A stretch of DNA of 63,860 bases, filler included, from Octopus bimaculoides (Eukaryota), in the NCBI RefSeq assembly GCF_001194135.2. It is 7 parts of 6 records of this genome, joined end to end, with 100 filler letters (N's around TTAATTAATTAA, not from the genome) between each part and the next. Parts side by side here need not be neighbours in the genome. Positions count along the whole stretch, not along the records: positions 9,511 to 32,272 come from NC_068985.1; 6 more parts are not named here. One strand, given 5' to 3'. Position 1 is the first letter of the stretch. Each line of letters begins with the position of its first letter. The translations under genes were made by a program, and so were the position numbers. The notes beneath the pieces were generated by a model. It was not told the DNA's origin. It was given only the letters and a program-made list of their open reading frames with translations, and made no database searches. Below, one piece after another: positions 10,186 through 58,450 of the stretch.

Positions 10186-11199
10186 CTAATTATCATTATT
10201 AGAACACAGCAAATGGTGGAATCGTAAGCCCATCGGCCAAAAAAAACGAGACGCATTTCTTCAAATTCTGTCGAGGCTTGCTTTTTCTTTCGTCATTTCG
10301 AAGCGGATAAAATAAGTACCAGNNNNNNNNNNNNNNNNNNNNNNNNNNNNNNNNNNNNNNNNNNNNNNNNNNNNNNNNNNNNNNNNNNNNNNNNNNNNNN
10401 NNNNNNNNNNNNNNNNNNNNNNNNNNNNNNNNNNNNNNNNNNNNNNNNNNNNNNNNNNNNNNNNNNNNNNNNNNNNNNNNNNNNNNNNNNNNNNNNNNNN
10501 NNNNNNNNNNNNNNNNNNNNNNNNNNNNNNNNNNNNNNNNNNNNNNNNNNNNNNNNNNNNNNNNNNNNNNNNNNNNNNNNNNNNNNNNNNNNNNNNNNNN
10601 NNNNNNNNNNNNNNNNNNNNNNNNNNNNNNNNNNNNNNNNNNNNNNNNNNNNNNNNNNNNNNNNNNNNNNNNNNNNNNNNNNNNNNNNNNNNNNNNNNNN
10701 NNNNNNNNNNNNNNNNNNNNNNNNNNNNNNNNNNNNNNNNNNNNNNNNNNNNNNNNNNNNNNNNNNNNNNNNNNNNNNNNNNNNNNNNNNNNNNNNNNNN
10801 NNNNNNNNNNNNNNNNNNNNNNNNNNNNNNNNNNNNNNNNNNNNNNNNNNNNNNNNNNNNNNNNNNNNNNNNNNNNNNNNNNNNNNNNNNNNNNNNNNNN
10901 NNNNNNNNNNNNNNNNNNNNNNNNNNNNNNNNNNNNNNNNNNNNNNNNNNNNNNNNNNNNNNNNNNNNNNNNNNNNNNNNNNNNNNNNNNNNNNNNNNNN
11001 NNNNNNNNNNNNNNNNNNNNNNNNNNNNNNNNNNNNNNNNNNNNNNNNNNNNNNNNNNNNNNNNNNNNNNNNNNNNNNNNNNNNNNNNNNNNNNNGGGGG
11101 GGGGGGGGCAGACACCATAGAAACCGGGAAACCGAGCCTATGAGCCTGGCTAGGCTTTAAAAAGGGCGCATAAAAAGACTATTACAATTAAAAGGCAAC

Positions 11200-11790
11200 A
11201 AGCTGGCAGAATCGCTTGCCTGATGGACAAAATGCTGAGCAGCATTGTTTTTGCTGCTCTGCGTCCTGAGTTCAAATATCGCCGTGGTCAACTTAGCCAT
11301 CCTTAAAGGACAACACAAGTCAAGTACAATGGTTCTCCTGAAGCCTACTGGCCTTGTGCTAAATTGGAATGAATCATTATTATTATTAAAATGCAGCAAG
11401 CTATCAGAATCGTTAGCTTACTGGAAAAAAAGCTTAGTCACTTTTTTCTGTCTTAAGCTCTGAGTTCACATCCTGCCGAGGTTAACTTTGCCTTTCGTCC
11501 CTCTGGGGTCGATAGAATAAATTGCAAGTAAAATACTGGGATAAGACGTAACTGATTTATCTCTCTCCTTCGCATTTTACATTTTGAGCTTATTGTAGAA
11601 AGAATTCGGGCAAAACGATTAGCAGCACTTCGTCTGTCTTTATGTTCTGAGTTCAAATTCCACCAACGTTCACCTTGCCTTTCACTCTTTAGGGGGTCTA
11701 TAAAATAAGTATAAGCTGAAGACTGGAATTGATGCAATCGACCTACCCTCTCTCCTAAAACTGCTGCCCTTGTGCCAACATTTGAAATCA
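11200..11790 (+). mobile_element. Cluster of three diverged family-B SINE copies
   Basis: Three successive CTGAGTTCA(A/C)A..C...GT(C/T)(A)AC.T(T)GCC cores at about 11265, 11460 and 11646. Confidence 0.7.
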
Positions 11791-14750
11791 TCATTATTAC
11801 CTTCGCCTTAGCGAAGGCGGAGGTAATATCATCAGTCGCATTAGTTATATTTTTGCCCCAATCAAATGAGATATAACACTCATTTCCTTTATTGTGTAGA
11901 ACTCTGAGATTAGGGAGTCGGGTCAGTAATAAACTATGGTAAAATATTCCTGCCCAAGCTTGTTAACTCTACGGACTTTCCTTTAAAACCTATATACTGA
12001 GATGGCATATCCACAATATAAACAACTTCATGTCATATGCAGATGATTTGAGTTTAACGTTACTGGATCGAATCTATTAAGCTATTTCGTCTCTTTGCTA
12101 ATTAGTTATTATTTATTTCTAAAATTTGCATAACGCAACAAAGTTATTACGATGAATAAATATCAAGTAATGAAATCCAGTATCAGATTGGTACTTATTT
12201 TATAGATATCAGAAAAATAAAAATAAACGTTAAACATGAAGAGGGCGTAACAAAATATCGTTAAAGTGCTCTCTTAATTTTGTCAATCATTGCTGTAATA
12301 TAAAGTAATATATAACACAGAAGCTAGACCACACATTTTGAATAAAGGGTATAACTGATTACTTCTAGCCCCAGTATATAATTATTACATATTTAATCGA
12401 CCCTAGAACGATGCAAAGAAAATGTGAGCTTAATGCAATCTGAACTCGTCAAATAAAGGGTCGGAATTAATTAACACTAGTCATTTATTCCGACGCTCTT
12501 CCGATTATATCAATTCCCTGCTTCTGTTGCGATAATATTAAAAACTGAATATAATACTTGGAATGGTATTCGCGACCGTTTAATGTGTACATATCTCCAT
12601 TTATATCGCATCAAAATGGCAAACTGTCGAATCAATTTTCACTTCTCCAAAGGTTTTATATTTGCCATAAATCCTTTCCAGTGCGGTATCCATTAACGAA
12701 CTGTCTTTTTAGATTGACTGCTTAGTAAACACTATGTTTTTCTAATTATGGAGCAACATGCGATGACGTTAGACACTTAATCTCTTTCGAAGCCATCACT
12801 CCATCATTAACTAGTAACCTTGCAGTTGTTTTTCAAATCCAGATGCATGAGCCACAAGGTAGTCATTAAGGTGTCACATACAAACGGGGAATATAAATTT
12901 CTGCTTGATTATTTGTTCTTTTTTTTATTGCAATATAATGTTTAGTGTTCTTTTAGTCAGTATAAAGCCTAGAACAATTTAGAGTAAAACGGAATATGAT
13001 ATTGTATATTACATTATCTTTGATGATAATGATTGTGGTATTGATGGTGGAGTTGGCTGTGGTGATATTCGAAGTAGTATTCCGCCTGATGATGATGTTG
13101 ATGATGATGATGTTTGGGCTGCAGTTGTAGTTGTTTTTCCTGACAAACATCGTAACAATAATTCCTCTTGGGTTTCTTTACTTTTATTTCGAGCCTTCAT
13201 CAATTTAAAATTTACTATCACACCAGTGGGATTTAAATGGTGCGAATATGTAGATAAAATGATTTTGAACCCTATCAACTAATTGATAAGTATAGACTCT
13301 GATAGTTTAAACAAAATGCTCAAGCTAACAGAATCTTTACTTATCAAACAAAACGTTTAAATTATCTCAACAGATTACTAAAATTTCGTCAGTAAATAAA
13401 CCTATTTTATGCGGCTAACATTAACGGAAGTAACGTGTCAATTTATCTAGGCAATATCCTTCAGACTGAAGAAACGATTTATTGCAGTATCTGATGTTTT
13501 GATAAACGCTATTTCTTCTTTTTTGTATGTGATAGATTAAATATAAACGTTTCCAATTACATTGATAGTCACTTATTTCTTAACAGCCCATATTCCCTCG
13601 ACAAAACATTAGCGTTCTTTATTATGTTTGTCGGTTTCCGTTTGAACTATACACGTTATGGTATGAGAGCTGAAATATAACCCCAAATTTGATTACTAAT
13701 TTTTACCACTTTATAACTTTTAACCGGAACAGAAAGAAGCTTCTTCGCAATAGTTACAATTTTGTTTGAGCCCACTAAATAATCCATGATTTAGAGTAAT
13801 ATATTGAAATTTTTCCGTTTATATCAGAAACTTAATTATAACGTTATTAGTATTTTATATTGCTGATTATTCTAATTTTTATTCATGCTTTCTTTGAGTG
13901 TATATAGTGCTTACAGAATTTTAACGCTTTTATAAAAACTGAATCATGTGGATAATAGACGTCGCATGTTTGTGTTTGAATAGTGGAAGAGTGGATGAGG
14001 AGGAAGAAGGGAAATGAGGCAGCTTTTGAGCAAAAAAAGGGACTGCGCACAGCTATAAACGTGTGTGTGGGCGGAGGAAACATACGTGAAAGAGAAGGGT
14101 TAAAAATTTCATCGTAAATTCGTCAGTAGCTTAAAATTTAACTGCAGTTTAGTTCACAAACGATCGATATAGAGCAACATGAATAACATACATTACCTTT
14201 TCAATAAGTCATCTTCGAATATTTATTTGTGAACTTCTTCACGGAATGTTAGTGTATTGGCTAATCTTCCTCTGCTTATTTCAATCCTTGATTTCCTCTC
14301 CCACAATTCACTGCCATTTTTTTCTAAATAGAGATCTCTACATCCCTTGTGTGTGAGGGGTTGGAAATCACATATTTTAAAGGAAGACTTTTCAAACAAT
14401 TTTCCTTATGAATATCTATTTTTTTTTCCTTTTGATAAGCTTGTATGGTGTATATATTATGTAGGGCTACATTTAAAATAAATTTAGGTTACTTGTTTGT
14501 TTTTTTAAGAAATCGTTTTCCAGTTTATATAAAAGAAGCTACATGCTCAGTAGGATTATATATACATATACGCATAGACATACACACACACACACGCGCA
14601 CACATTGTTATATATATATATATATATATATATAGCAATTTAGCTAGGTGTAAAATAGATACGTGTGTAAAAATTGTACATGTATGCATATTGTAAGAAA
14701 AAAATATATATATGCATGCTTATGTATATAGATATATATGTATATATATG

Positions 14751-14809
<59 letters not shown>

Positions 14810-15709
14810 NNNNNNNNNNNNNNNNNNNNNNNNNNNNNNNNNNNNNNNNNNNNNNNNNNNNNNNNNNNNNNNNNNNNNNNNNNNNNNNNNNNNNNNNNNN
14901 NNNNNNNNNNNNNNNNNNNNNNNNNNNNNNNNNNNNNNNNNNNNNNNNNNNNNNNNNNNNNNNNNNNNNNNNNNNNNNNNNNNNNNNNNNNNNNNNNNNN
15001 NNNNNNNNNNNNNNNNNNNNNNNNNNNNNNNNNNNNNNNNNNNNNNNNNNNNNNNNNNNNNNNNNNNNNNNNNNNNNNNNNNNNNNNNNNNNNNNNNNNN
15101 NNNNNNNNNNNNNNNNNNNNNNNNNNNNNNNNNNNNNNNNNNNNNNNNNNNNNNNNNNNNNNNNNNNNNNNNNNNNNNNNNNNNNNNNNNNNNNNNNNNN
15201 NNNNNNNNNNNNNNNNNNNNNNNNNNNNNNNNNNNNNNNNNNNNNNNNNNNNNNNNNNNNNNNNNNNNNNNNNNNNNNNNNNNNNNNNNNNNNNNNNNNN
15301 NNNNNNNNNNNNNNNNNNNNNNNNNNNNNNNNNNNNNNNNNNNNNNNNNNNNNNNNNNNNNNNNNNNNNNNNNNNNNNNNNNNNNNNNNNNNNNNNNNNN
15401 NNNNNNNNNNNNNNNNNNNNNNNNNNNNNNNNNNNNNNNNNNNNNNNNNNNNNNNNNNNNNNNNNNNNNNNNNNNNNNNNNNNNNNNNNNNNNNNNNNNN
15501 NNNNNNNNNNNNNNNNNNNNNNNNNNNNNNNNNNNNNNNNNNNNNNNNNNNNNNNNNNNNNNNNNNNNNNNNNNNNNNNNNNNNNNNNNNNNNNNNNNNN
15601 NNNNNNNNNNNNNNNNNNNNNNNNNNNNNNNNNNNNNNNNNNNNNNNNNNNNNNNNNNNNNNNNNNNNNNNNNNNNNNNNNNNNNNNNNNNNNNNTATAT
15701 ATATATAGT

Positions 15710-19100: not shown

Positions 19101-19456
19101 ATCTACCCGAACACCTCACTTATAGCACTTCGTGTCAACGAAAACGTACCTGCCTACCTTCCAGAAATAGCACCAAATTTTCATCAACTCGCACTATACC
19201 ATTTAAAAAAATTGAAGGGTGCATTGGGTGATGTAGTTACAAGGCAGACACTAAGTTTGAATGAATAAAAGAAAAGATAGTATAAGCAGAACGTCTTGTT
19301 TGGCATGACTTTACTTACAGTGAATTGGGATAGAAATATTGTGATAGTACATATATAGCTATTTAAGTTCGAGAAATAACAGTACACCCTAGATTTTGAT
19401 ATCACTATTTTCAATTTCTGTTGGTTTACAACACTTGATTTTTATAAAACTAAAAC

Positions 19457-19859
19457 TAAAGGTGAGGGTTTGTTGCCAACTTAATGTGGCAGTCCCAGGA
19501 AAGGGAAGAATGCTGCTGCTATTTAACCCCAGGAAACACCGTCTCTAGTTGGCTATGTGACACAAGCGTACTATGTGACACAAGCGTACGATGTCCTTAT
19601 GTTTTTAAACAGGGGAGATAAGCACCTCCACCCAGCAAAGCCAGCATCCAGAGACTAGTTTCAGAGCCATTGCTCTTCATCAGTCTGGAGTAGCTTGGCT
19701 TGCTAGCTGTCGGTGTTTATTCACCTTTGAAAACATAAGGACACAGTACGCTTGTGTTACATATCCAACTAGAAATGGTGTTTCCTGGGGCTAAATAGCA
19801 GTAGCATTCTTCCCTTTCGTGGGACTGCCACATTAAGTTGGCAACAAACCATCTCTTTA
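19457..19859. mobile_element. ORF-less foldback element (about 400 bp) with long inverted arms
   Basis: 19467 onward is the reverse complement of 19850 backward: the first 31 nt are identical and there are about 7 mismatches in about 105 nt. Pairing continues with bulges up to the central hammerhead. Confidence 0.9.
19647..19689 (-). ncRNA. Minimal type I hammerhead ribozyme
   Basis: Minus strand: UCCAGA-CUGAUGA-AGAGC(AAUG)GCUCU-GAAA-CUAG-UC^UCUGGA. All core nucleotides are present, with a 6-bp stem I, a 5-bp stem II, palindromic stem III ACUAGU and a GUC cleavage triplet (cut between 19653 and 19652). Confidence 0.85.
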
Positions 19860-20767
19860 TCGTGCTGCTACTGTATAAGTCTCTCTGAGAGACTTAGAAA
19901 TGCAATATTTCTAAAACTAAAAGCGTTTTACATATATTTATGGATTATCTATTTATTCCTTATTTTGGTGTTAACTAAACAAGAAAAAACACTAAGTAAA
20001 AACTCATTCAATTCAAAAAATGTCTATAGAAAAATAATCAGTAATATATACACAAGCACATACGGACACGCATTGTTACAAGATTTCTATAAAACACGCA
20101 CACAAGCTCAAACATAATCATAAAGCATGCACACACTCTAACACTCACAAGCGTAGTCAATGCATATACTTTCAAACGTTAGTTTTTTAATGTTTTTACT
20201 CAAATAGATATGTTTACATATTGTATTTGAAGGTTACCTCAATGGCAATATAAGTTGCTTATTGCTACTCTTGTTAATACCATCAACGTCTAACAATCAC
20301 AATGCTGCTACTACAAAGAAGAGCAATTTCTTTTTATTAAAGTAACTTATTTTTGGTTATATTATTTATTTTCTGTTCAAATCCCACTGAGGTCTATTTA
20401 TTTGCCTTGTATTTCTCTGAAGATATATAACCTGAGTGTGTTATTCTTTCGGGAACAATTTCAGTTACGCCGTTAATAGTCTTGTGAAAATTGTATGAAT
20501 GTCGTATTCTCGCTTGCAATTAGCGTTTTATTATGAGTTGTTACCAATAATATTATAGAGGAGCAAGCGGTGATTTGGCAGAATCGTTAAGACAAATGCT
20601 TAGCAGCATTTCGTCTGTCTATATGTTCTGAATTCAAATCCGGCTTTGAATTTTGTTTTTCATTGATTTTGCTTTTCATCCTTTCGGGTCCGGTAAAAGA
20701 AGAATCAATTATTCCCCTCCCCTAAGATTTTAGGCTTTTTGCCTATAGCAGAAAAGAATATTATTAT

Positions 20768-21015: not shown

Positions 21016-22690
21016 TCCTTTTTTTGATATCGGCAGAAATAGTAGGTCACCCTTCTGAATATCTTCTAGTGCGAGGTTCGTTGAGTTTGTCATTTAATAT
21101 ACTATCAGTAATCAAACATTCCTCTATAAAAAAAATGTTTCTGTTGAACGAAGAGAATATTATTCTAATAAACGAAATCTTTATTAAGAACTATTAAAAA
21201 TTATTATTAATTCTATCACCATCCACTAAAGCCAACATTGCTTTCAACCTTTAGGAGTCAATGAAATAAAGTATCAGTCAAGTACAGAGCTTACGGTATC
21301 GACTAACACTCAACACCTCAAAATTGCTGACTTTCAGCTAAAACTAGAAGTGATTAAATACCGGAAGTTAGCAACATCCTTAGAGGGTCGGAAATAATGC
21401 TCTTTACGTAGAGTCCGAATCATAACGAGATCAGTTTTGCGCCTCATCTTTTCGGATTGCCGTGTTCAACATGAAGATTATCCCCCACTACTAGAGTAGA
21501 CATCTACCACTTGTTAGGTAGCTATGACAAAATTGATTGCACGATGGACAAAGATGATAGGACTGGCGGCAAGGAATTTCTGCTTCGGTAAAACTCTCAT
21601 CAATTTCCTGGAGTTCCGTTTGGAGAGGAAAGTAAGCGAATGTGAATACAAGAAATATATAGAAATGCATCCGGTCGAAATGTTAAGGTATGTGATTATC
21701 AATCACAGTTGTTACGTAAGACATTAAAATCCTAGCAGTCTAGTCGAAGTAACTGCTGAGAGTTGGTGTTAATGTACTCAATATAACGATGCAAACAATT
21801 AGATTTTAAACTGCACCCGGTTTTTTGGGGGTATTATGAAAGAAAATAAGCTTATACTTGTGCATCTAAAATATTCTTATTTTTCAATATACATATAACA
21901 AATCCGTTTATTATAAATGTTGATGATTTATGGATAACTATTGATATATTAGTATTGCTTATGGCTATTTTAATGTGGCTGTCCTCTATGAGACGCTGAT
22001 ACTATCATTTAACGCCGAGAAAACATTTCCAGTTGGTTTACTCAGTGCGTTTCTAGCACTCGATATTTATTACAAGCAGAATAAAACTCCTGCGACACTA
22101 GCTCTGAGACCACCAGAACACGTGGTTTTGATCTATATTGGATCTCCTCGGTGGTGGGCACTCGTTCACCAGGTACGGCAGCAGTTTAACCTCGCTTGAA
22201 GTATATAGGAAATACAGTATCATACAATCACTAATTGTGTAACTAGGAATGTAACTAGGAAACTAGTTCGTTAGAAAATCTCTGTTTGAGATAGAAGCAG
22301 TATACGAACCAAAAATATTCTTCATTGCCACTTTATCGATATATTGCCATTCATGTATCGAGTACATCGACGCTTAACCCCATGCCAACCCCAATCAAAC
22401 AAACCAGTAAACAAAAGTATTGCATCCATGTATTGAGTCCTTGTATTATCATCAATAATGAACCACATGTGAAGATCCATACATCATCCATCACATACGG
22501 ATTATTTTATGTTTAACTATTTAGTTCTTCGTCGTTCATGATCCCAAGCTTTTGACAACAATGTTTCCCTCCACTCCCTCCCGATATACCTTATGATATT
22601 TTGACTTAAAGATATCGTTATACTATTATACTATACAAACTTAAATGTAGTTTTCTTTTTATCCTTTCTCACTTCTTTCTATTTGTGCAG

Positions 22691-22849
22691 TTGTTGTGGA
22701 CCGGTACAAAGTCTACAATGTTCAGTTAAATGATGTCTGGGTGATCAGCAACGGTACAGCCATCTTAAAGTGTCTCATTAACCCACGTTTTGTGAATGAA
22801 TACATTAAGGTTACGAAATGGACTCAGGATTCAAAGCCTATCACCGATC
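22691..22849 (+). CDS. Dscam: Dscam-like exon: N-terminal half of Ig2
   Basis: Pyrimidine tract plus GCAG acceptor and GTAAGT donor, phase 1/1. Translates (V)VVDRYKVYNVQLNDVWVISNGTAILKCLINPRFVNEYIKVTKWTQDSKPITD, resembling Dscam Ig2 VV.QYY...V....VIRGN.AILKC.IPSFV...V.V.SW. Confidence 0.88.
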
Positions 22850-23632
22850 GTAAGTATCTTCATTCTATTAAGGCCGCCATACACCAGTGTAAAAGCAAAG
22901 TAAATATTTTATTAAACTTCTAAATCAACAGTCAGTAGAGGGAGGCCCTTAAATGGGTACTGGACTTGTTAGAAATACAAGATAAATATATATCAAACCA
23001 CACAACACTATCGCAAAAAGAAAAGGAGAGACTCTATAATGAAGTTACAGACACATTGTCTGAAATTATTTCATTTATTGCTACAAAATATTGGTTAATT
23101 TAAAAACTAGAAACCCACACCGAGTTTGATCTTCCAATCTAAACAAGTTGTTTATATTAGAACATTAGTTAATACAAGTAACATACTAGTAATTTATTCA
23201 ACGAATAAGCTGCTAGGAGCGTGTTACATATACAAATTGTTCTGTCTAATTTTGTTAAGCACCTAACATAATGAGTTTATAAGCGAGGGTTCGTTGGCAA
23301 TTAAACAAGGTATCGTCATTCGTGAAACCCCCAATAATTCAGTGATAGCAAATTGAATACAAAGACTGTTTTTAAACGAAGATAGTGTGTATTAAGACAC
23401 GTTTCCATCTGTCTATGCTTATATTGCTCATTAAGATGAAGAATACACAAGCACGCGAACGCACGCGCACGCACGCACACACACACACACACATACACAC
23501 AGGCATACATTCTCACACATATATATGTGCGTGTGCGTGCACACGCGTGTGTGCTAAAAGAGATTTGCTCAAAATGGGACTTAGTCGGATGAACTACGAA
23601 ATGTCTTAATTTCTTAATCCATCTGCTATGTA

Positions 23633-24010: not shown

Positions 24011-24092
24011 TATGTATACATATATATCTTGTGTACGTAGATACGCAGTATGTGAATCTTTGCATATAATTCGACAACGTAAATTATTGCAG

Positions 24093-24239
24093 ACGACCGA
24101 GTTTCTGCAATGAACAATGGAGAGCTACATGTCCGCAACGTGCAGGATTCGGATACTTCTTTGGTATATCGTTGCGTGACACGAAATATACTGACACAAG
24201 ATAGTAAGACAAGTCCTCCTGCTTCTATACACGTCCATG
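24093..24239 (+). CDS. Dscam: Dscam-like exon: C-terminal half of Ig2
   Basis: TTGCAG acceptor and GTAAGT donor, phase 1/1. Translates (H)DRVSAMNNGELHVRNVQDSDTSLVYRCVTRNILTQDSKTSPPASIHVH, resembling Dscam GELHIR.V...D....Y.CRT...LT. Confidence 0.88.
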
Positions 24240-24780
24240 GTAAGTCAAAAGTAATCAATTCTATGTACCTGTGTCTGTGTATGTTCAGTCGTGAACATGT
24301 GTGTTTCTGCCCTCGGCATATATATATATTTTTTTGCTAGGGTATGCACATCAATGTGCATGCAATGGTGTAGAAATGTATGCATTAGTTTATGTTCGTG
24401 AGCATGCATGCAGTTGAAAGTGTATAACTATATGTGCTCTGGCTTTGATGATGTTTATGTATTTATATCCAAACTTTACTTGCATGGCTTAGCACACGTA
24501 TACGCATGGGTCTGTATGTATAGGATTTTGTAGCGGTGTACATTGTTATTTCAGTGTATTTGTTTGTAGTTTATACAGGTATGTGTGAATTTCTTTTTAT
24601 GCACAAAAGAGCAAAAGAGCGTGCATAGTTTCCTATGTATATATATATATATAGAAATGTGTGTATATATATATGTATATAGAAATGTATGTATATATAT
24701 GTATATATATGTATGTATATAGAAATGTATCTATGTATATATTTTTTGTATGTATATATATATCTATGTATATATATATC

Positions 24781-24811
<31 letters not shown>

Positions 24812-25115
24812 GTATATNNNNNNNNNNNNNNNNNNNNNNNNNNNNNNNNNNNNNNNNNNNNNNNNNNNNNNNNNNNNNNNNNNNNNNNNNNNNNNNNNNN
24901 NNNNNNNNNNNNNNNNNNNNNNNNNNNNNNNNNNNNNNNNNNNNNNNNNNNNNNNNNNNNNNNNNNNNNNNNNNNNNNNNNNNNNNNNNNNNNNNNNNNN
25001 NNNNNNNNNNNNNNNNNNNNNNNNNNNNNNNNNNNNNNNNNNNNNNNNNNNNNNNNNNNNNNNNNNNNNNNNNNNNNNNNNNNNNNNNNNNNNNNNNNNN
25101 NNNNNNNNNNNNNNN

Positions 25116-58050: not shown

Positions 58051-58450
58051 CGGCAATGCAACACTGAAACCGTCCAATATGAGGTGGAAGTGAGGTCAAA
58101 GGATCTTGGCGGGCAGACGGATATGCAAATATATATGGGCGGGACAGAAGGTCTCTTCAGGATCAGATTTAACCATCATAAGTCCTCTTTTAATATTCAG
58201 GAGAAGTGGAATATCACAGCCTTAGCAAGGTGCATATGGTTGTTAGAAGGAAAGCGTTGTGGAATACAATATATAGTGCAGAATACAAGAGAGGTGCTGT
58301 ACTTTAATAGTAGTAGGGGGTGCAAAGTTTACTAGGCGGAAAAGAAAAGAATTACTCTAAACTCTCTTCATCCAAACTCAAACCTAAACTGTAAAAGTGA
58401 GATTTCACACACCTGCCCTCAGGAGCGAAGATATGTTCTTGGATACTGGT
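58051..58450 (+). mobile_element. Penelope-like element GIY-YIG endonuclease relic
   Basis: QCNTETVQYEVEV...IYMGGTEGLFRIRFNHHKSSF...TALARCIWLL...GCKVY*AEK...LNCKSEISHTC matches the PLE endonuclease pattern VY...YIG.TE..FK.R...HK.SF...T.LS..IW.L...C.LC..EK...LN..SE...C. It has an internal stop. Confidence 0.78.

What the first reader, a model, noticed from the sequence alone, without database searches (positions are those of the whole stretch)
19457..19859. Foldback element with an intact hammerhead ribozyme at its symmetry axis
Seen: a ~400-bp element with no ORF whose halves are inverted repeats. On the minus strand the pairing continues, with small bulges, into stem I of a complete hammerhead (UCCAGA CUGAUGA AGAGC-AAUG-GCUCU GAAA CUAG UC^UCUGGA). 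The transcript would be a single rod capped by a ribozyme. Established: minimal type I hammerheads with a short palindromic stem III occur in Penelope-like element pLTRs and in metazoan non-LTR retrozymes, where they usually sit in direct/tandem repeats and can cleave as dimers. Inference: one ribozyme at the tip of a long perfect foldback is a different architecture. It may be a distinct non-autonomous 'hairpin retrozyme' mobilised by Penelope RT (a PLE endonuclease relic is present at 58051) or a source of self-processed long dsRNA/circular RNA. The arms carry several mismatches while the core is intact.
Basis: partly seen in the sequence, partly recalled or inferred. Interest (0 to 1): 0.9.

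Follow-up and report, generated by a model that had tools for sequence, protein, structure and literature searches.

The report
Octopus hammerhead ribozyme inside a foldback insertion
A 449-bp mobile-element insertion in an intron of an octopus DSCAM gene carries a complete hammerhead ribozyme motif at the centre of two inverted arms, and it most likely formed when a Penelope-type retroelement integrated rather than being a new kind of ribozyme element.

Summary
On the minus strand, 19689-19647 is a complete type I hammerhead. It sits at the tip of a foldback with arms of 176 and 196 nt (88% complementary; fold -256 kcal/mol, z = -25). My descriptor finds it once in the piece, against 0.001 hits expected by chance.

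The foldback belongs to a 449-bp insertion, 19456-19904. It is flanked by an 18-bp target-site duplication whose 11-mer core occurs nowhere else in 22.8 kb. A 45-nt extension is present on one side only. The host is Octopus (DSCAM exons 97% identical to O. bimaculoides), and the ribozyme is antisense to the gene.

Three results argue against a selected RNA rod:
- The arms show no G·U bias towards the ribozyme strand.
- The complementary strand folds better.
- An intact core is expected by chance about half the time.

The duplication, the one-sided extension, the AT-rich repeat target and the inverted arms match published signatures of Penelope-like integration. I therefore read it as two head-to-head truncated 3'-end copies joined at the ribozyme hairpin, probably a one-off relic.

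No cephalopod genome could be searched, so a foldback family is not excluded. Hammerheads with the same stems I and III in marine metagenome contigs sit in direct tandem units without foldbacks. Interest is moderate.

The parts
19438..19455 (.). Target-site duplication, left copy: ATTTTTATAAAACTAAAA
   Evidence: It matches 19905-19922 at 16 of 18 positions. An 18-mer with at most 2 mismatches between flanks occurs in 1 of 300 shuffles and 1 of 492 control segment pairs. The shared 11-mer TAAAACTAAAA, and even the 8-mer AACTAAAA, occur only at these two places in 22.8 kb.
19457..19652 (-). Arm 3' of the ribozyme (196 nt), starting at the base after the cleavage site. Its outer end, ...CAACAAACCCUCACCUUUAG, abuts the duplication. 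It contains a perfect 18-nt tandem duplication at 19553-19588.
19647..19689 (-). Type I hammerhead motif. Helix I 5' strand 19689-19684; CUGAUGA 19683-19677; helix II with AAUG loop 19676-19663; GAAA 19662-19659; CUAG (helix III) 19658-19655; U16.1 and C17 at 19654-19653; cleavage between 19653 and 19652; helix I 3' strand 19652-19647.
   Evidence: Sequence. It is the only descriptor hit, with 0.001 expected. The competent fold is 1.8 kcal/mol above the minimum-energy fold. Rfam has no match, but its models also miss the control hammerheads.
19684..19859 (-). Arm 5' of the ribozyme (176 nt), the reverse complement of the other arm. Read on the + strand it is a second copy of the same sequence, and that copy runs on into the 45-nt extension.
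   Evidence: Complementarity rises from about 81% in the 60 nt next to the core, to 88%, to 95% in the outer bin.
19860..19904 (.). 45-nt extension present on one side only. It contains a 9-10 bp palindrome (stem-loop) at 19876-19896. I interpret it as a PLE-type tail.
   Evidence: It lies between the foldback and the right copy of the duplication. The self-complementary hit is at 19876-19896. The whole insertion is 45% G+C against 28-34% in the flanks.
19905..19922 (.). Target-site duplication, right copy: ATATTTCTAAAACTAAAA

Best explanation
The feature is a 449-bp retrotransposed insertion (19456-19904) in an intron of an Octopus DSCAM gene, in antisense orientation. It most likely consists of two head-to-head copies of the last ~180-200 nt of one hammerhead-bearing RNA that was mobilised by a Penelope-like reverse transcriptase/endonuclease.

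Proposed mechanism (inferred):
1. The enzyme nicked both strands of a (TTTTAG)-like AT-rich target about 18 bp apart.
2. Each nick primed cDNA synthesis near the RNA's 3' end. One cDNA started at the outer start site and so includes the 45-nt tail. The other started at the inner, AC-rich start site and has no tail.
3. The longer cDNA ran through the ribozyme and its native extended helix I.
4. The two cDNA 3' ends annealed through that native hairpin and were filled in.

The result is near-identical outer arms, a more irregular inner stem, and a single ribozyme at the junction. This copy is a decaying relic. Its ribozyme needs a partner to form helix III, and no partner lies within 22.8 kb. 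Cleavage at the tip of a ~190-bp stem could not release a product.

Shown: the motif, the arms, the duplication, the one-sided extension and the host gene. Inferred: the Penelope enzyme, the two-strand priming and the annealing step.
For: - The hammerhead motif is real and unique in the piece.
- The foldback is real.
- An 18-bp flanking direct repeat matches at 16 of 18 positions and is rare by chance. Its 11-mer core occurs only at the two flanks.
- The insertion is 45% G+C against 28-34% in the flanks.
- A 45-nt extension with a stem-loop lies on one side only.
- Nothing points to an RNA-level origin of the pairing. Mismatches give G·U 5 times on each strand, and the non-ribozyme strand folds better at -261.4 against -256.1 kcal/mol.
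- Arm divergence (12%) is about equal to duplication divergence (11%). This is compatible with arms that were exact complements at insertion, although the duplication estimate rests on 2 of 18 positions.
- Mismatches cluster next to the core (binomial P = 0.02), as expected if only the inner stem is native.
- Published PLE features match. Inverted 5'-truncated copies adjacent to direct ones, a 30-40 bp tail often at one end only, and a microsatellite target bias are described in PMC8557442. Cleavage and extension of both target strands, two internal reverse-transcription start sites that define the tail, and an AT-rich target preference are described in PMC11167929.
- Hammerheads with the same helices I and III in marine metagenome contigs L002-L004 sit in direct or tandem units of 727-1021 nt with no foldback.
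Against: - Only one copy was available, and no cephalopod genome could be searched. The parent element, its tail and its reverse transcriptase are therefore unseen.
- No Penelope ORF or any Pfam-recognisable relic lies in the 22.8-kb piece.
- The extension is 45 nt, slightly longer than the published 30-40 bp.
- Arm complementarity changes as a gradient (81, 88, 95%) rather than a sharp step.
- The microsatellite-like target leaves the boundaries uncertain by about 6 nt.
- The annealing step at the ribozyme hairpin is my inference and is not published.
Confidence: 0.45

Rival explanations
1. A true family of 'hairpin retrozymes'. This would be a non-autonomous retroelement whose master copy is itself a foldback with the ribozyme at its tip. 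It would be transcribed as a long hairpin and copied as a unit by a Penelope or LINE reverse transcriptase. The 45 nt would be its 5' leader.
For: The whole foldback plus leader is bracketed by one target-site duplication, so it entered as one unit. The ribozyme-competent fold is accessible. Metazoan retrozyme RNAs are described as highly self-paired with the ribozyme left free (PMC7229834).
Against: No second copy lies in 57 kb of octopus DNA, and nothing matched in the collections scanned. Those collections hold little or no cephalopod DNA, so this is weak evidence. A ~190-bp near-perfect duplex is a poor reverse-transcription template. The pairing shows no strand bias. Related hammerheads sit in tandem units without foldbacks. 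Known PLE integration already produces inverted copies.
Confidence: 0.2
2. A solo, circularly permuted monomer of an ordinary tandem non-LTR retrozyme. The circular RNA would be a rod with the ribozyme at one end and the 45-nt hairpin loop at the other. A one-unit cDNA opened at the far loop would look like a foldback in DNA.
For: The unit size of 449 nt, the 45% G+C and a duplication longer than 4 bp fit the published description (PMC7229834). Solo monomers are common (bioRxiv 10.64898/2026.07.22.740005). The 45-nt segment would close the rod.
Against: RNA-selected rods should show G·U pairs favouring the ribozyme strand, and none is seen (5 against 5). The outer arms are 95% Watson-Crick complementary, and the opposite strand is the more stable. 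There is no tandem neighbour. The related unit in L003 is only 59% paired and branched.
Confidence: 0.12
3. A later local inverted duplication, caused by a replication or repair error, of an ordinary single hammerhead-bearing repeat that was already at this site.
For: The arms are DNA-level complements without strand bias. Palindrome centres are known to accumulate asymmetry, which would fit the more irregular centre.
Against: The duplication brackets the whole structure, including both arms. The axis falls exactly on the ribozyme core, so that the innermost 6 nt of the arms form helix I. An unrelated rearrangement would have to hit that point by coincidence.
Confidence: 0.1
4. A MITE-like or foldback DNA transposon with a TA target duplication that happens to carry a ribozyme.
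For: The inverted repeat runs to TAAAG.../...CTTTA, so each end can be read as a TA flanking AAG...CTT. A mariner-like relic lies in the same piece at 31664-31972.
Against: TA next to an end is common in 30% G+C DNA. The outermost ~12 nt of the arms are the least well matched part of the outer arm, the opposite of what transposase-bound ends show. The 18-bp flanking repeat and the one-sided 45 nt are left unexplained.
Confidence: 0.08
5. A chance hammerhead-like sequence in an unrelated hairpin.
For: Rfam models give no hit. Pair 10.1-11.1 is A-U.
Against: The descriptor expectation is 0.001 per piece. The core is an asymmetric 7/10-nt internal loop that cannot arise from a palindrome by symmetry. 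The Rfam models also miss bona fide tandem hammerheads.
Confidence: 0.03

Closest known systems
Metazoan type I hammerhead ribozymes with a short palindromic helix III (newt/Schistosoma type and the PLE 'min-HHR' variants; Cervera & de la Pena 2014, PMC4209133)
   Same: It has the CUGAUGA...GAAA...UC core, an open helix I of 6 bp, and a helix II closed by a tetraloop. Helix III is reduced to A15.1-U16.1 plus C-G around a 2-nt loop, giving the palindrome ACUAGU that can form 6 bp only between two copies.
   Different: Pair 10.1-11.1 is A-U instead of the highly conserved G-C. Helix I continues, through bulges, into a ~190-bp stem instead of ending in loop 1. No partner ribozyme lies nearby.
Penelope-like element insertions (pLTR hammerhead, inverted 5'-truncated copy, one-sided 30-40 bp tail, microsatellite targets; PMC8557442, PMC11167929)
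   Same: It has inverted copies of a 3'-terminal segment, an extension on one side only, a long target-site duplication in an AT-rich repeat-like target, and a hammerhead ~200 nt from the element's 3' end in sense orientation.
   Different: No RT/GIY-YIG ORF or pLTR-ORF unit is present. The copies are so short that they meet at the ribozyme itself. The extension is 45 nt.
Metazoan non-LTR retrozymes (Cervera & de la Pena 2020, PMC7229834)
   Same: It is a non-coding unit of a few hundred nt with low G+C, a type I hammerhead and a highly self-paired predicted RNA that leaves the ribozyme free. Its duplication is longer than 4 bp.
   Different: It is not tandem and has a single ribozyme. The pairing is near-perfect Watson-Crick without strand bias, which looks like DNA-level symmetry rather than RNA-level selection.
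Tandem hammerhead units in marine metagenome contigs L002, L003 and L004
   Same: Helix I (CAGA/UCUG), the core, and the helix III and cleavage-site sequence (GAAACUAGUC) are identical, although the search pattern required this. Helix I is likewise extended beyond an internal loop.
   Different: Helix II differs entirely (GACC/GGUC, with the canonical G10.1-C11.1). The units are 727-1021 nt in direct repeat, with no inverted arms and no similarity outside the ribozyme.

Membership tests
Hammerhead ribozyme, type I | Conserved core: C3 U4 G5 A6 N7 G8 A9, G12 A13 A14, A15.1-U16.1, and H17 at the cleavage site | tested here: met
   CUGAUGA ... GAAA ... U C^ is read directly. It is the only descriptor hit, with 0.001 expected.
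Hammerhead ribozyme, type I | Helices I and II flank the core, with helix I open (type I topology) | tested here: met
   Helix I is UCCAGA/UCUGGA (6 bp). Helix II is AGAGC/GCUCU (5 bp) with loop AAUG. The constrained fold is only 1.8 kcal/mol above the minimum-energy fold.
Hammerhead ribozyme, type I | G10.1-C11.1 pair at the base of helix II, highly conserved in natural hammerheads (PMC4209133) | tested here: not met
   The pair is A-U here. The relatives L002-L004 have G-C.
Hammerhead ribozyme, type I | Stable helix III, or a palindromic helix III that lets two copies form a dimer | tested here: met
   A monomer is impossible because C-G would close a 2-nt loop. ACUAGU is a perfect 6-nt palindrome, which is the dimer-type class of PMC4209133. 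No partner motif lies in the piece.
Hammerhead ribozyme, type I | Score at or above the Rfam gathering threshold for a hammerhead model | tested here: inconclusive
   There is no hit at gathering score or at E<=10. The same library also misses the tandem hammerheads of L002-L004, so it is insensitive to this class.
Hammerhead ribozyme, type I | Site-specific self-cleavage | not testable with these tools
   This needs in vitro transcription of monomer and dimer constructs with a core mutant as control.
Metazoan non-LTR retrozyme | Tandem repeats of about 150-400 bp, each with a type I hammerhead | tested here: not met
   There is a single ribozyme and no direct repeat of the unit within 22.8 kb.
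Metazoan non-LTR retrozyme | Non-coding, G+C below 50%, and a target-site duplication longer than 4 bp when present | tested here: met
   ORFs are 50 aa or shorter. G+C is 45%, and the duplication is 18 bp.
Metazoan non-LTR retrozyme | Abundant circular RNA from the unit | not testable with these tools
   No RNA data were available.
Penelope-like element insertion | RT plus GIY-YIG ORF, or demonstrable identity to the 3' end or pLTR of such an element | tested here: not met
   There is no such ORF and no Pfam hit in the piece. The parent element could not be looked for in octopus genomes.
Penelope-like element insertion | Inverted 5'-truncated copy next to a direct copy, with a 30-40 bp tail at one end only | tested here: met
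   It has head-to-head arms and a 45-nt extension on one side only. The comparison is with PMC8557442 and PMC11167929.
Penelope-like element insertion | Hammerhead in sense orientation upstream of the 3' end | tested here: met
   The cleavage site lies 196 nt (241 nt with the tail) from the arm end.
MITE / foldback DNA transposon | Well-conserved terminal inverted repeats flanked by a short duplication of fixed length | tested here: inconclusive
   TA can be read at both ends, but the outermost ~12 nt match poorly. A much longer flanking repeat exists.

The most novel reading that the evidence does not exclude
The ribozyme-capped hairpin may be the structure through which the two opposing cDNAs of a Penelope-type integration anneal. 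If so, the weakly active, dimer-dependent hammerheads conserved in these elements would serve partly as a DNA-joining hairpin. Junctions of inverted Penelope copies would then fall at the ribozyme far more often than chance allows. Alternatively, octopus may hold a real family of foldback 'hairpin retrozymes' that yield long, tip-nicked double-stranded RNA.
Probability: 0.15. Interest if true: 0.7.

Novelty: new variant of a known kind. Interest (0 to 1): 0.4.

Why it matters
The role of hammerheads in Penelope-like elements is still called unknown (PMC8557442, PMC7761336). The integration mechanism that yields inverted copies and tails has only recently been reconstituted in vitro (PMC11167929). 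This insertion is small and fully bounded, with a target-site duplication, a one-sided tail, two inverted 3'-end copies and a junction exactly at the ribozyme. It is a compact natural record of that reaction, and it suggests a testable link between the ribozyme hairpin and joining of the two cDNAs.

I found no paper in the searchable library that combines hammerhead ribozymes with Octopus bimaculoides. As a single decayed intronic copy it probably has no function of its own. In the host pre-mRNA, its complement would form a ~190-bp intronic double-stranded stem.

Tried and rejected
1. Rfam at gathering score and at E<=10, on 521 nt and on 86 nt. There was no hammerhead hit, only noise from C/D-box and miRNA models triggered by UGAUGA...CUGA. 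The control on L002-L004 was also negative, so I did not use Rfam as evidence.

2. Looking for other copies. All of these came back empty:
   - repeats and BLAST within the piece;
   - a 25-mer from the arm against the metagenome collection;
   - ribozyme patterns against viral contigs;
   - ribozyme patterns against prokaryotic genomes, which gave one Clostridium hit with no helix II, a chance match;
   - the 45-aa arm ORF against the protein collection;
   - exact look-up of 10 window ORFs.

3. A profile of the two arm peptides against 1.84 billion protein representatives. The single hit, P0039, is a 1302-aa tandem-repeat protein with 23 weak stretches. It is unrelated, and its score is inflated by repetition.

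4. Fetching the orthologous DSCAM intron from other Octopus assemblies. The gene ranges are 158 kb and 189 kb, so no DNA was returned. The one locus I obtained, L001 (34 kb of O. bimaculoides CM046605.1), has no copy of the element and no hammerhead.

5. A LINE fragment from L001, used to harvest more octopus loci, gave only three hits on contigs under 1 kb.

6. A literature string search for the ribozyme sequence hit only miR-745a, a coincidence.

7. A covariance model from the four hammerheads was abandoned, because MAFFT put helix II in different registers. I used a relaxed descriptor instead.

8. The argument that the core is conserved while the arms decay was rejected on the numbers.

Full report
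**The observation**

The minus strand of 19647-19689 reads UCCAGA CUGAUGA AGAGC-AAUG-GCUCU GAAA CUAG UC^UCUGGA. This is a complete type I hammerhead:
- every strictly conserved core base is present;
- helix I has 6 bp;
- helix II has 5 bp with a tetraloop;
- helix III is reduced to A15.1-U16.1 plus one C-G pair around a 2-nt loop.

Helix III therefore cannot close within one molecule. The palindrome ACUAGU can form six pairs only between two copies. This is the class described for metazoan type I and Penelope-associated hammerheads (PMC4209133).

A structural descriptor that I wrote finds this site and no other in the 22.8-kb piece, against 0.001 hits expected. Allowing one core mismatch adds nothing, either in the piece or in 34 kb of O. 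bimaculoides DNA.

Rfam finds no hammerhead at any threshold. It also misses the tandem hammerheads of three metagenome contigs used as a control, so I set that negative aside. One real deviation is A-U instead of G-C at pair 10.1-11.1.

The ribozyme sits at the axis of two inverted arms of 176 and 196 nt. They align with 153 matches, 21 mismatches, and gaps that include an 18-nt perfect tandem duplication in one arm. The strand folds into one rod at -256 kcal/mol (z = -25). Keeping the core in its active arrangement costs only 1.8 kcal/mol.

**Boundaries and setting**

The foldback is not the whole element. An 18-bp direct repeat lies at 19438-19455 and 19905-19922 (ATTTTTATAAAACTAAAA and ATATTTCTAAAACTAAAA, 16 of 18 matching). 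It brackets the foldback plus a further 45 nt on one side, 19860-19904.
- Such a repeat appears in 1 of 300 shuffles and in 1 of 492 control pairs of segments.
- Its 11-mer core, and even an 8-mer within it, occurs nowhere else in the piece.
- The bracketed 449 bp are 45% G+C, against 28-34% in the flanks.

I conclude that this is a target-site duplication and that 19456-19904 entered as one insertion. The target resembles a short (TTTTAG) repeat, which leaves about 6 nt of uncertainty at the ends. The 45-nt extension contains its own 9-10 bp palindrome at 19876-19896.

The surrounding sequence is animal DNA with microsatellites, SINE-like repeats and assembly gaps. Four immunoglobulin-domain exons on the plus strand are 97% identical to DSCAM of Octopus bimaculoides, and close to but not identical with O. 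vulgaris DSCAM. The insertion therefore lies in a DSCAM intron, and the ribozyme is antisense to the gene.

**Is the rod an RNA feature or a DNA feature?**

Three results point to DNA-level symmetry:
1. Of the 21 arm mismatches, 5 would be G·U on the ribozyme strand and 5 would be G·U on the opposite strand.
2. The opposite strand folds better, -261.4 against -256.1 kcal/mol.
3. Arm divergence (12%) is about the same as divergence between the two duplication copies (2 of 18, 11%). This is compatible with arms that were exact complements at insertion, although the duplication figure is very imprecise.

At 4-6% change per arm, the 11 strict core bases stay untouched with probability 0.5-0.64. 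Core plus both helices stay untouched with probability 0.13-0.26.

Mismatches are not spread evenly. Complementarity is about 81% in the 60 nt next to the core, 88% in the next 60, and 95% in the outer 60. Ten of 21 mismatches fall in the inner 44 columns (binomial P = 0.02).

**Most likely mechanism**

Published work on Penelope-like elements describes four features that match this insertion:
- Insertions often carry an inverted 5'-truncated copy next to the direct copy.
- A 30-40 bp tail is often present at one end only.
- Targets are biased towards microsatellites (PMC8557442).
- The purified enzyme cleaves and extends both target strands, prefers AT-rich sites, and starts reverse transcription at two internal sites whose spacing defines the tail (PMC11167929).

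Read this way, each arm is a cDNA copy of the last ~180-200 nt of one hammerhead-bearing RNA.
- The copy on the plus strand started at the outer site and carries the 45-nt tail.
- The copy on the minus strand started at the inner site, which ends in the AC-rich CAACAAACCCUCACC. It ran on through the ribozyme and the native upstream strand of helix I.
- Because the native RNA already forms a bulged, extended helix I, the 3' ends of the two cDNAs are complementary there. They can anneal and be filled in.

This model explains several features at once: one ribozyme at the junction, an irregular inner stem, near-identical outer arms, a tail on one side, and an ~18-bp duplication. The enzyme, the two-strand priming and the annealing step are inferences. 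I give the model a confidence of 0.45.

**What this copy could do**

- No second hammerhead lies within 22.8 kb, so helix III could form only with a transcript from elsewhere.
- Published single-copy constructs of this class cleave poorly or not at all (PMC4209133; PMC7229834).
- With a helix I of ~190 bp, the cleavage products could not separate, so the reaction would be readily reversed.
- The ribozyme strand would need antisense transcription. In the DSCAM pre-mRNA, only the complementary hairpin would form.

I regard the copy as a relic.

**Rivals**

- A real family of foldback 'hairpin retrozymes' (0.2) cannot be excluded, because I could not search any cephalopod genome. It fits the single duplication around the whole unit. 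It is disfavoured by the lack of strand bias, by the difficulty of copying a near-perfect 190-bp duplex, and by the fact that known Penelope integration already makes such inversions.
- A permuted solo monomer of a tandem retrozyme with a rod-like circular RNA (0.12) fits the size and G+C. It predicts RNA-level pairing signatures that are absent.
- A later local inversion (0.1) would need its axis to fall exactly on the ribozyme core by coincidence.
- A MITE-like element with a TA duplication (0.08) leaves the 18-bp repeat and the one-sided 45 nt unexplained.
- Chance (0.03) is excluded by the descriptor statistics.

**Related sequences**

A pattern fixing helix I, the core and the helix III/cleavage-site sequence found three marine metagenome contigs.
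- Helix II there is entirely different but still pairs (GACC/GGUC).
- The ribozymes sit in direct repeats of 727 nt (L003, two copies) and 1021 nt (L002).
- There are no inverted arms, no ORFs of note, and no similarity to the octopus arms.
- The L003 unit folds as a branched structure that is 59% paired.

This ribozyme type is therefore normally found in tandem, non-foldback units.

**Limits**

Everything about family structure rests on one copy. Attempts to reach more octopus DNA failed. DSCAM gene ranges exceed the 100-kb limit for fetching DNA, the window's ORFs are not in the protein collection, and my protein-based searches for copies found nothing real.

**Verdict**

The interpretation as a new ribozyme architecture is only partly supported. 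The most economical reading is a short Penelope-type insertion whose inverted halves meet at the hammerhead. Interest is moderate (0.4), and I class it as a new variant of a known kind. The most interesting surviving possibility is that the ribozyme hairpin is the joining point for the two cDNAs, or that a true foldback family exists.

Noticed in passing
window 22651-22920, 24083-24337, 27373-27693, 30524-30856 (+ strand): Four immunoglobulin-domain exons of a DSCAM gene. They are 97% identical to O. bimaculoides XP_014769049 and slightly different from O. vulgaris CAI9722677, so the piece is Octopus, probably O. bimaculoides. The N-terminal 631 aa of the O. vulgaris gene alone span 158 kb.
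   Followed up: yes
window 11484-11795, 20665-20762, 26433-26582, 28367-28516: At least four copies, in both orientations, of a SINE-like repeat of about 150 nt (core ...GCCTTTCATCCTTTCGGGGTCGATAAA...), 63-85% alike. One copy lies about 750 nt from the insertion but is not part of it.
   Followed up: no
window 31664-31972 (- strand): An ORF fragment with a mariner/Tc1-like transposase C-terminal look (...VWQQDSAPFHTS...). Pfam gave no hit at E<0.01.
   Followed up: partly
L002 (Ga0314680_10104106), L003 (OBQE01000158.1), L004 (OQVM01076114.1): Marine metagenome contigs with non-coding direct repeats of 727-1021 nt, each carrying a type I hammerhead (GAAACUAGUC, helix II GACC/GGUC). They look like large retrozyme-like or circular-RNA units from unknown marine organisms. 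Rfam does not detect their ribozymes.
   Followed up: partly
window 19553-19588: A perfect 18-nt tandem duplication (CTATGTGACACAAGCGTA, twice) in one arm only. It is a replication-slippage event that postdates arm formation.
   Followed up: partly
window 19647-19689 (- strand): The hammerhead core draws weak C/D-box snoRNA matches in Rfam (UGAUGA ... CUGA, 10-14 bits). The boxes are only 11 nt apart, so this is a motif coincidence and not a snoRNA.
   Followed up: yes
window 10323-11095, 14810-15695, 24818-25115; L001 several: Assembly gaps (runs of N) are flanked by AT/AC microsatellites. The chromosome-level O. bimaculoides record fetched as L001 still carries many such gaps.
   Followed up: no
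P0039 (protein representative library): A 1302-aa predicted protein made of about 23 tandem repeats of a ~52-aa unit (…WCYLIPGDVVQRWMARPVMLSD…). It matched the arm-peptide profile only through many weak repeats. Its origin is unknown, and it is probably a translated satellite.
   Followed up: partly
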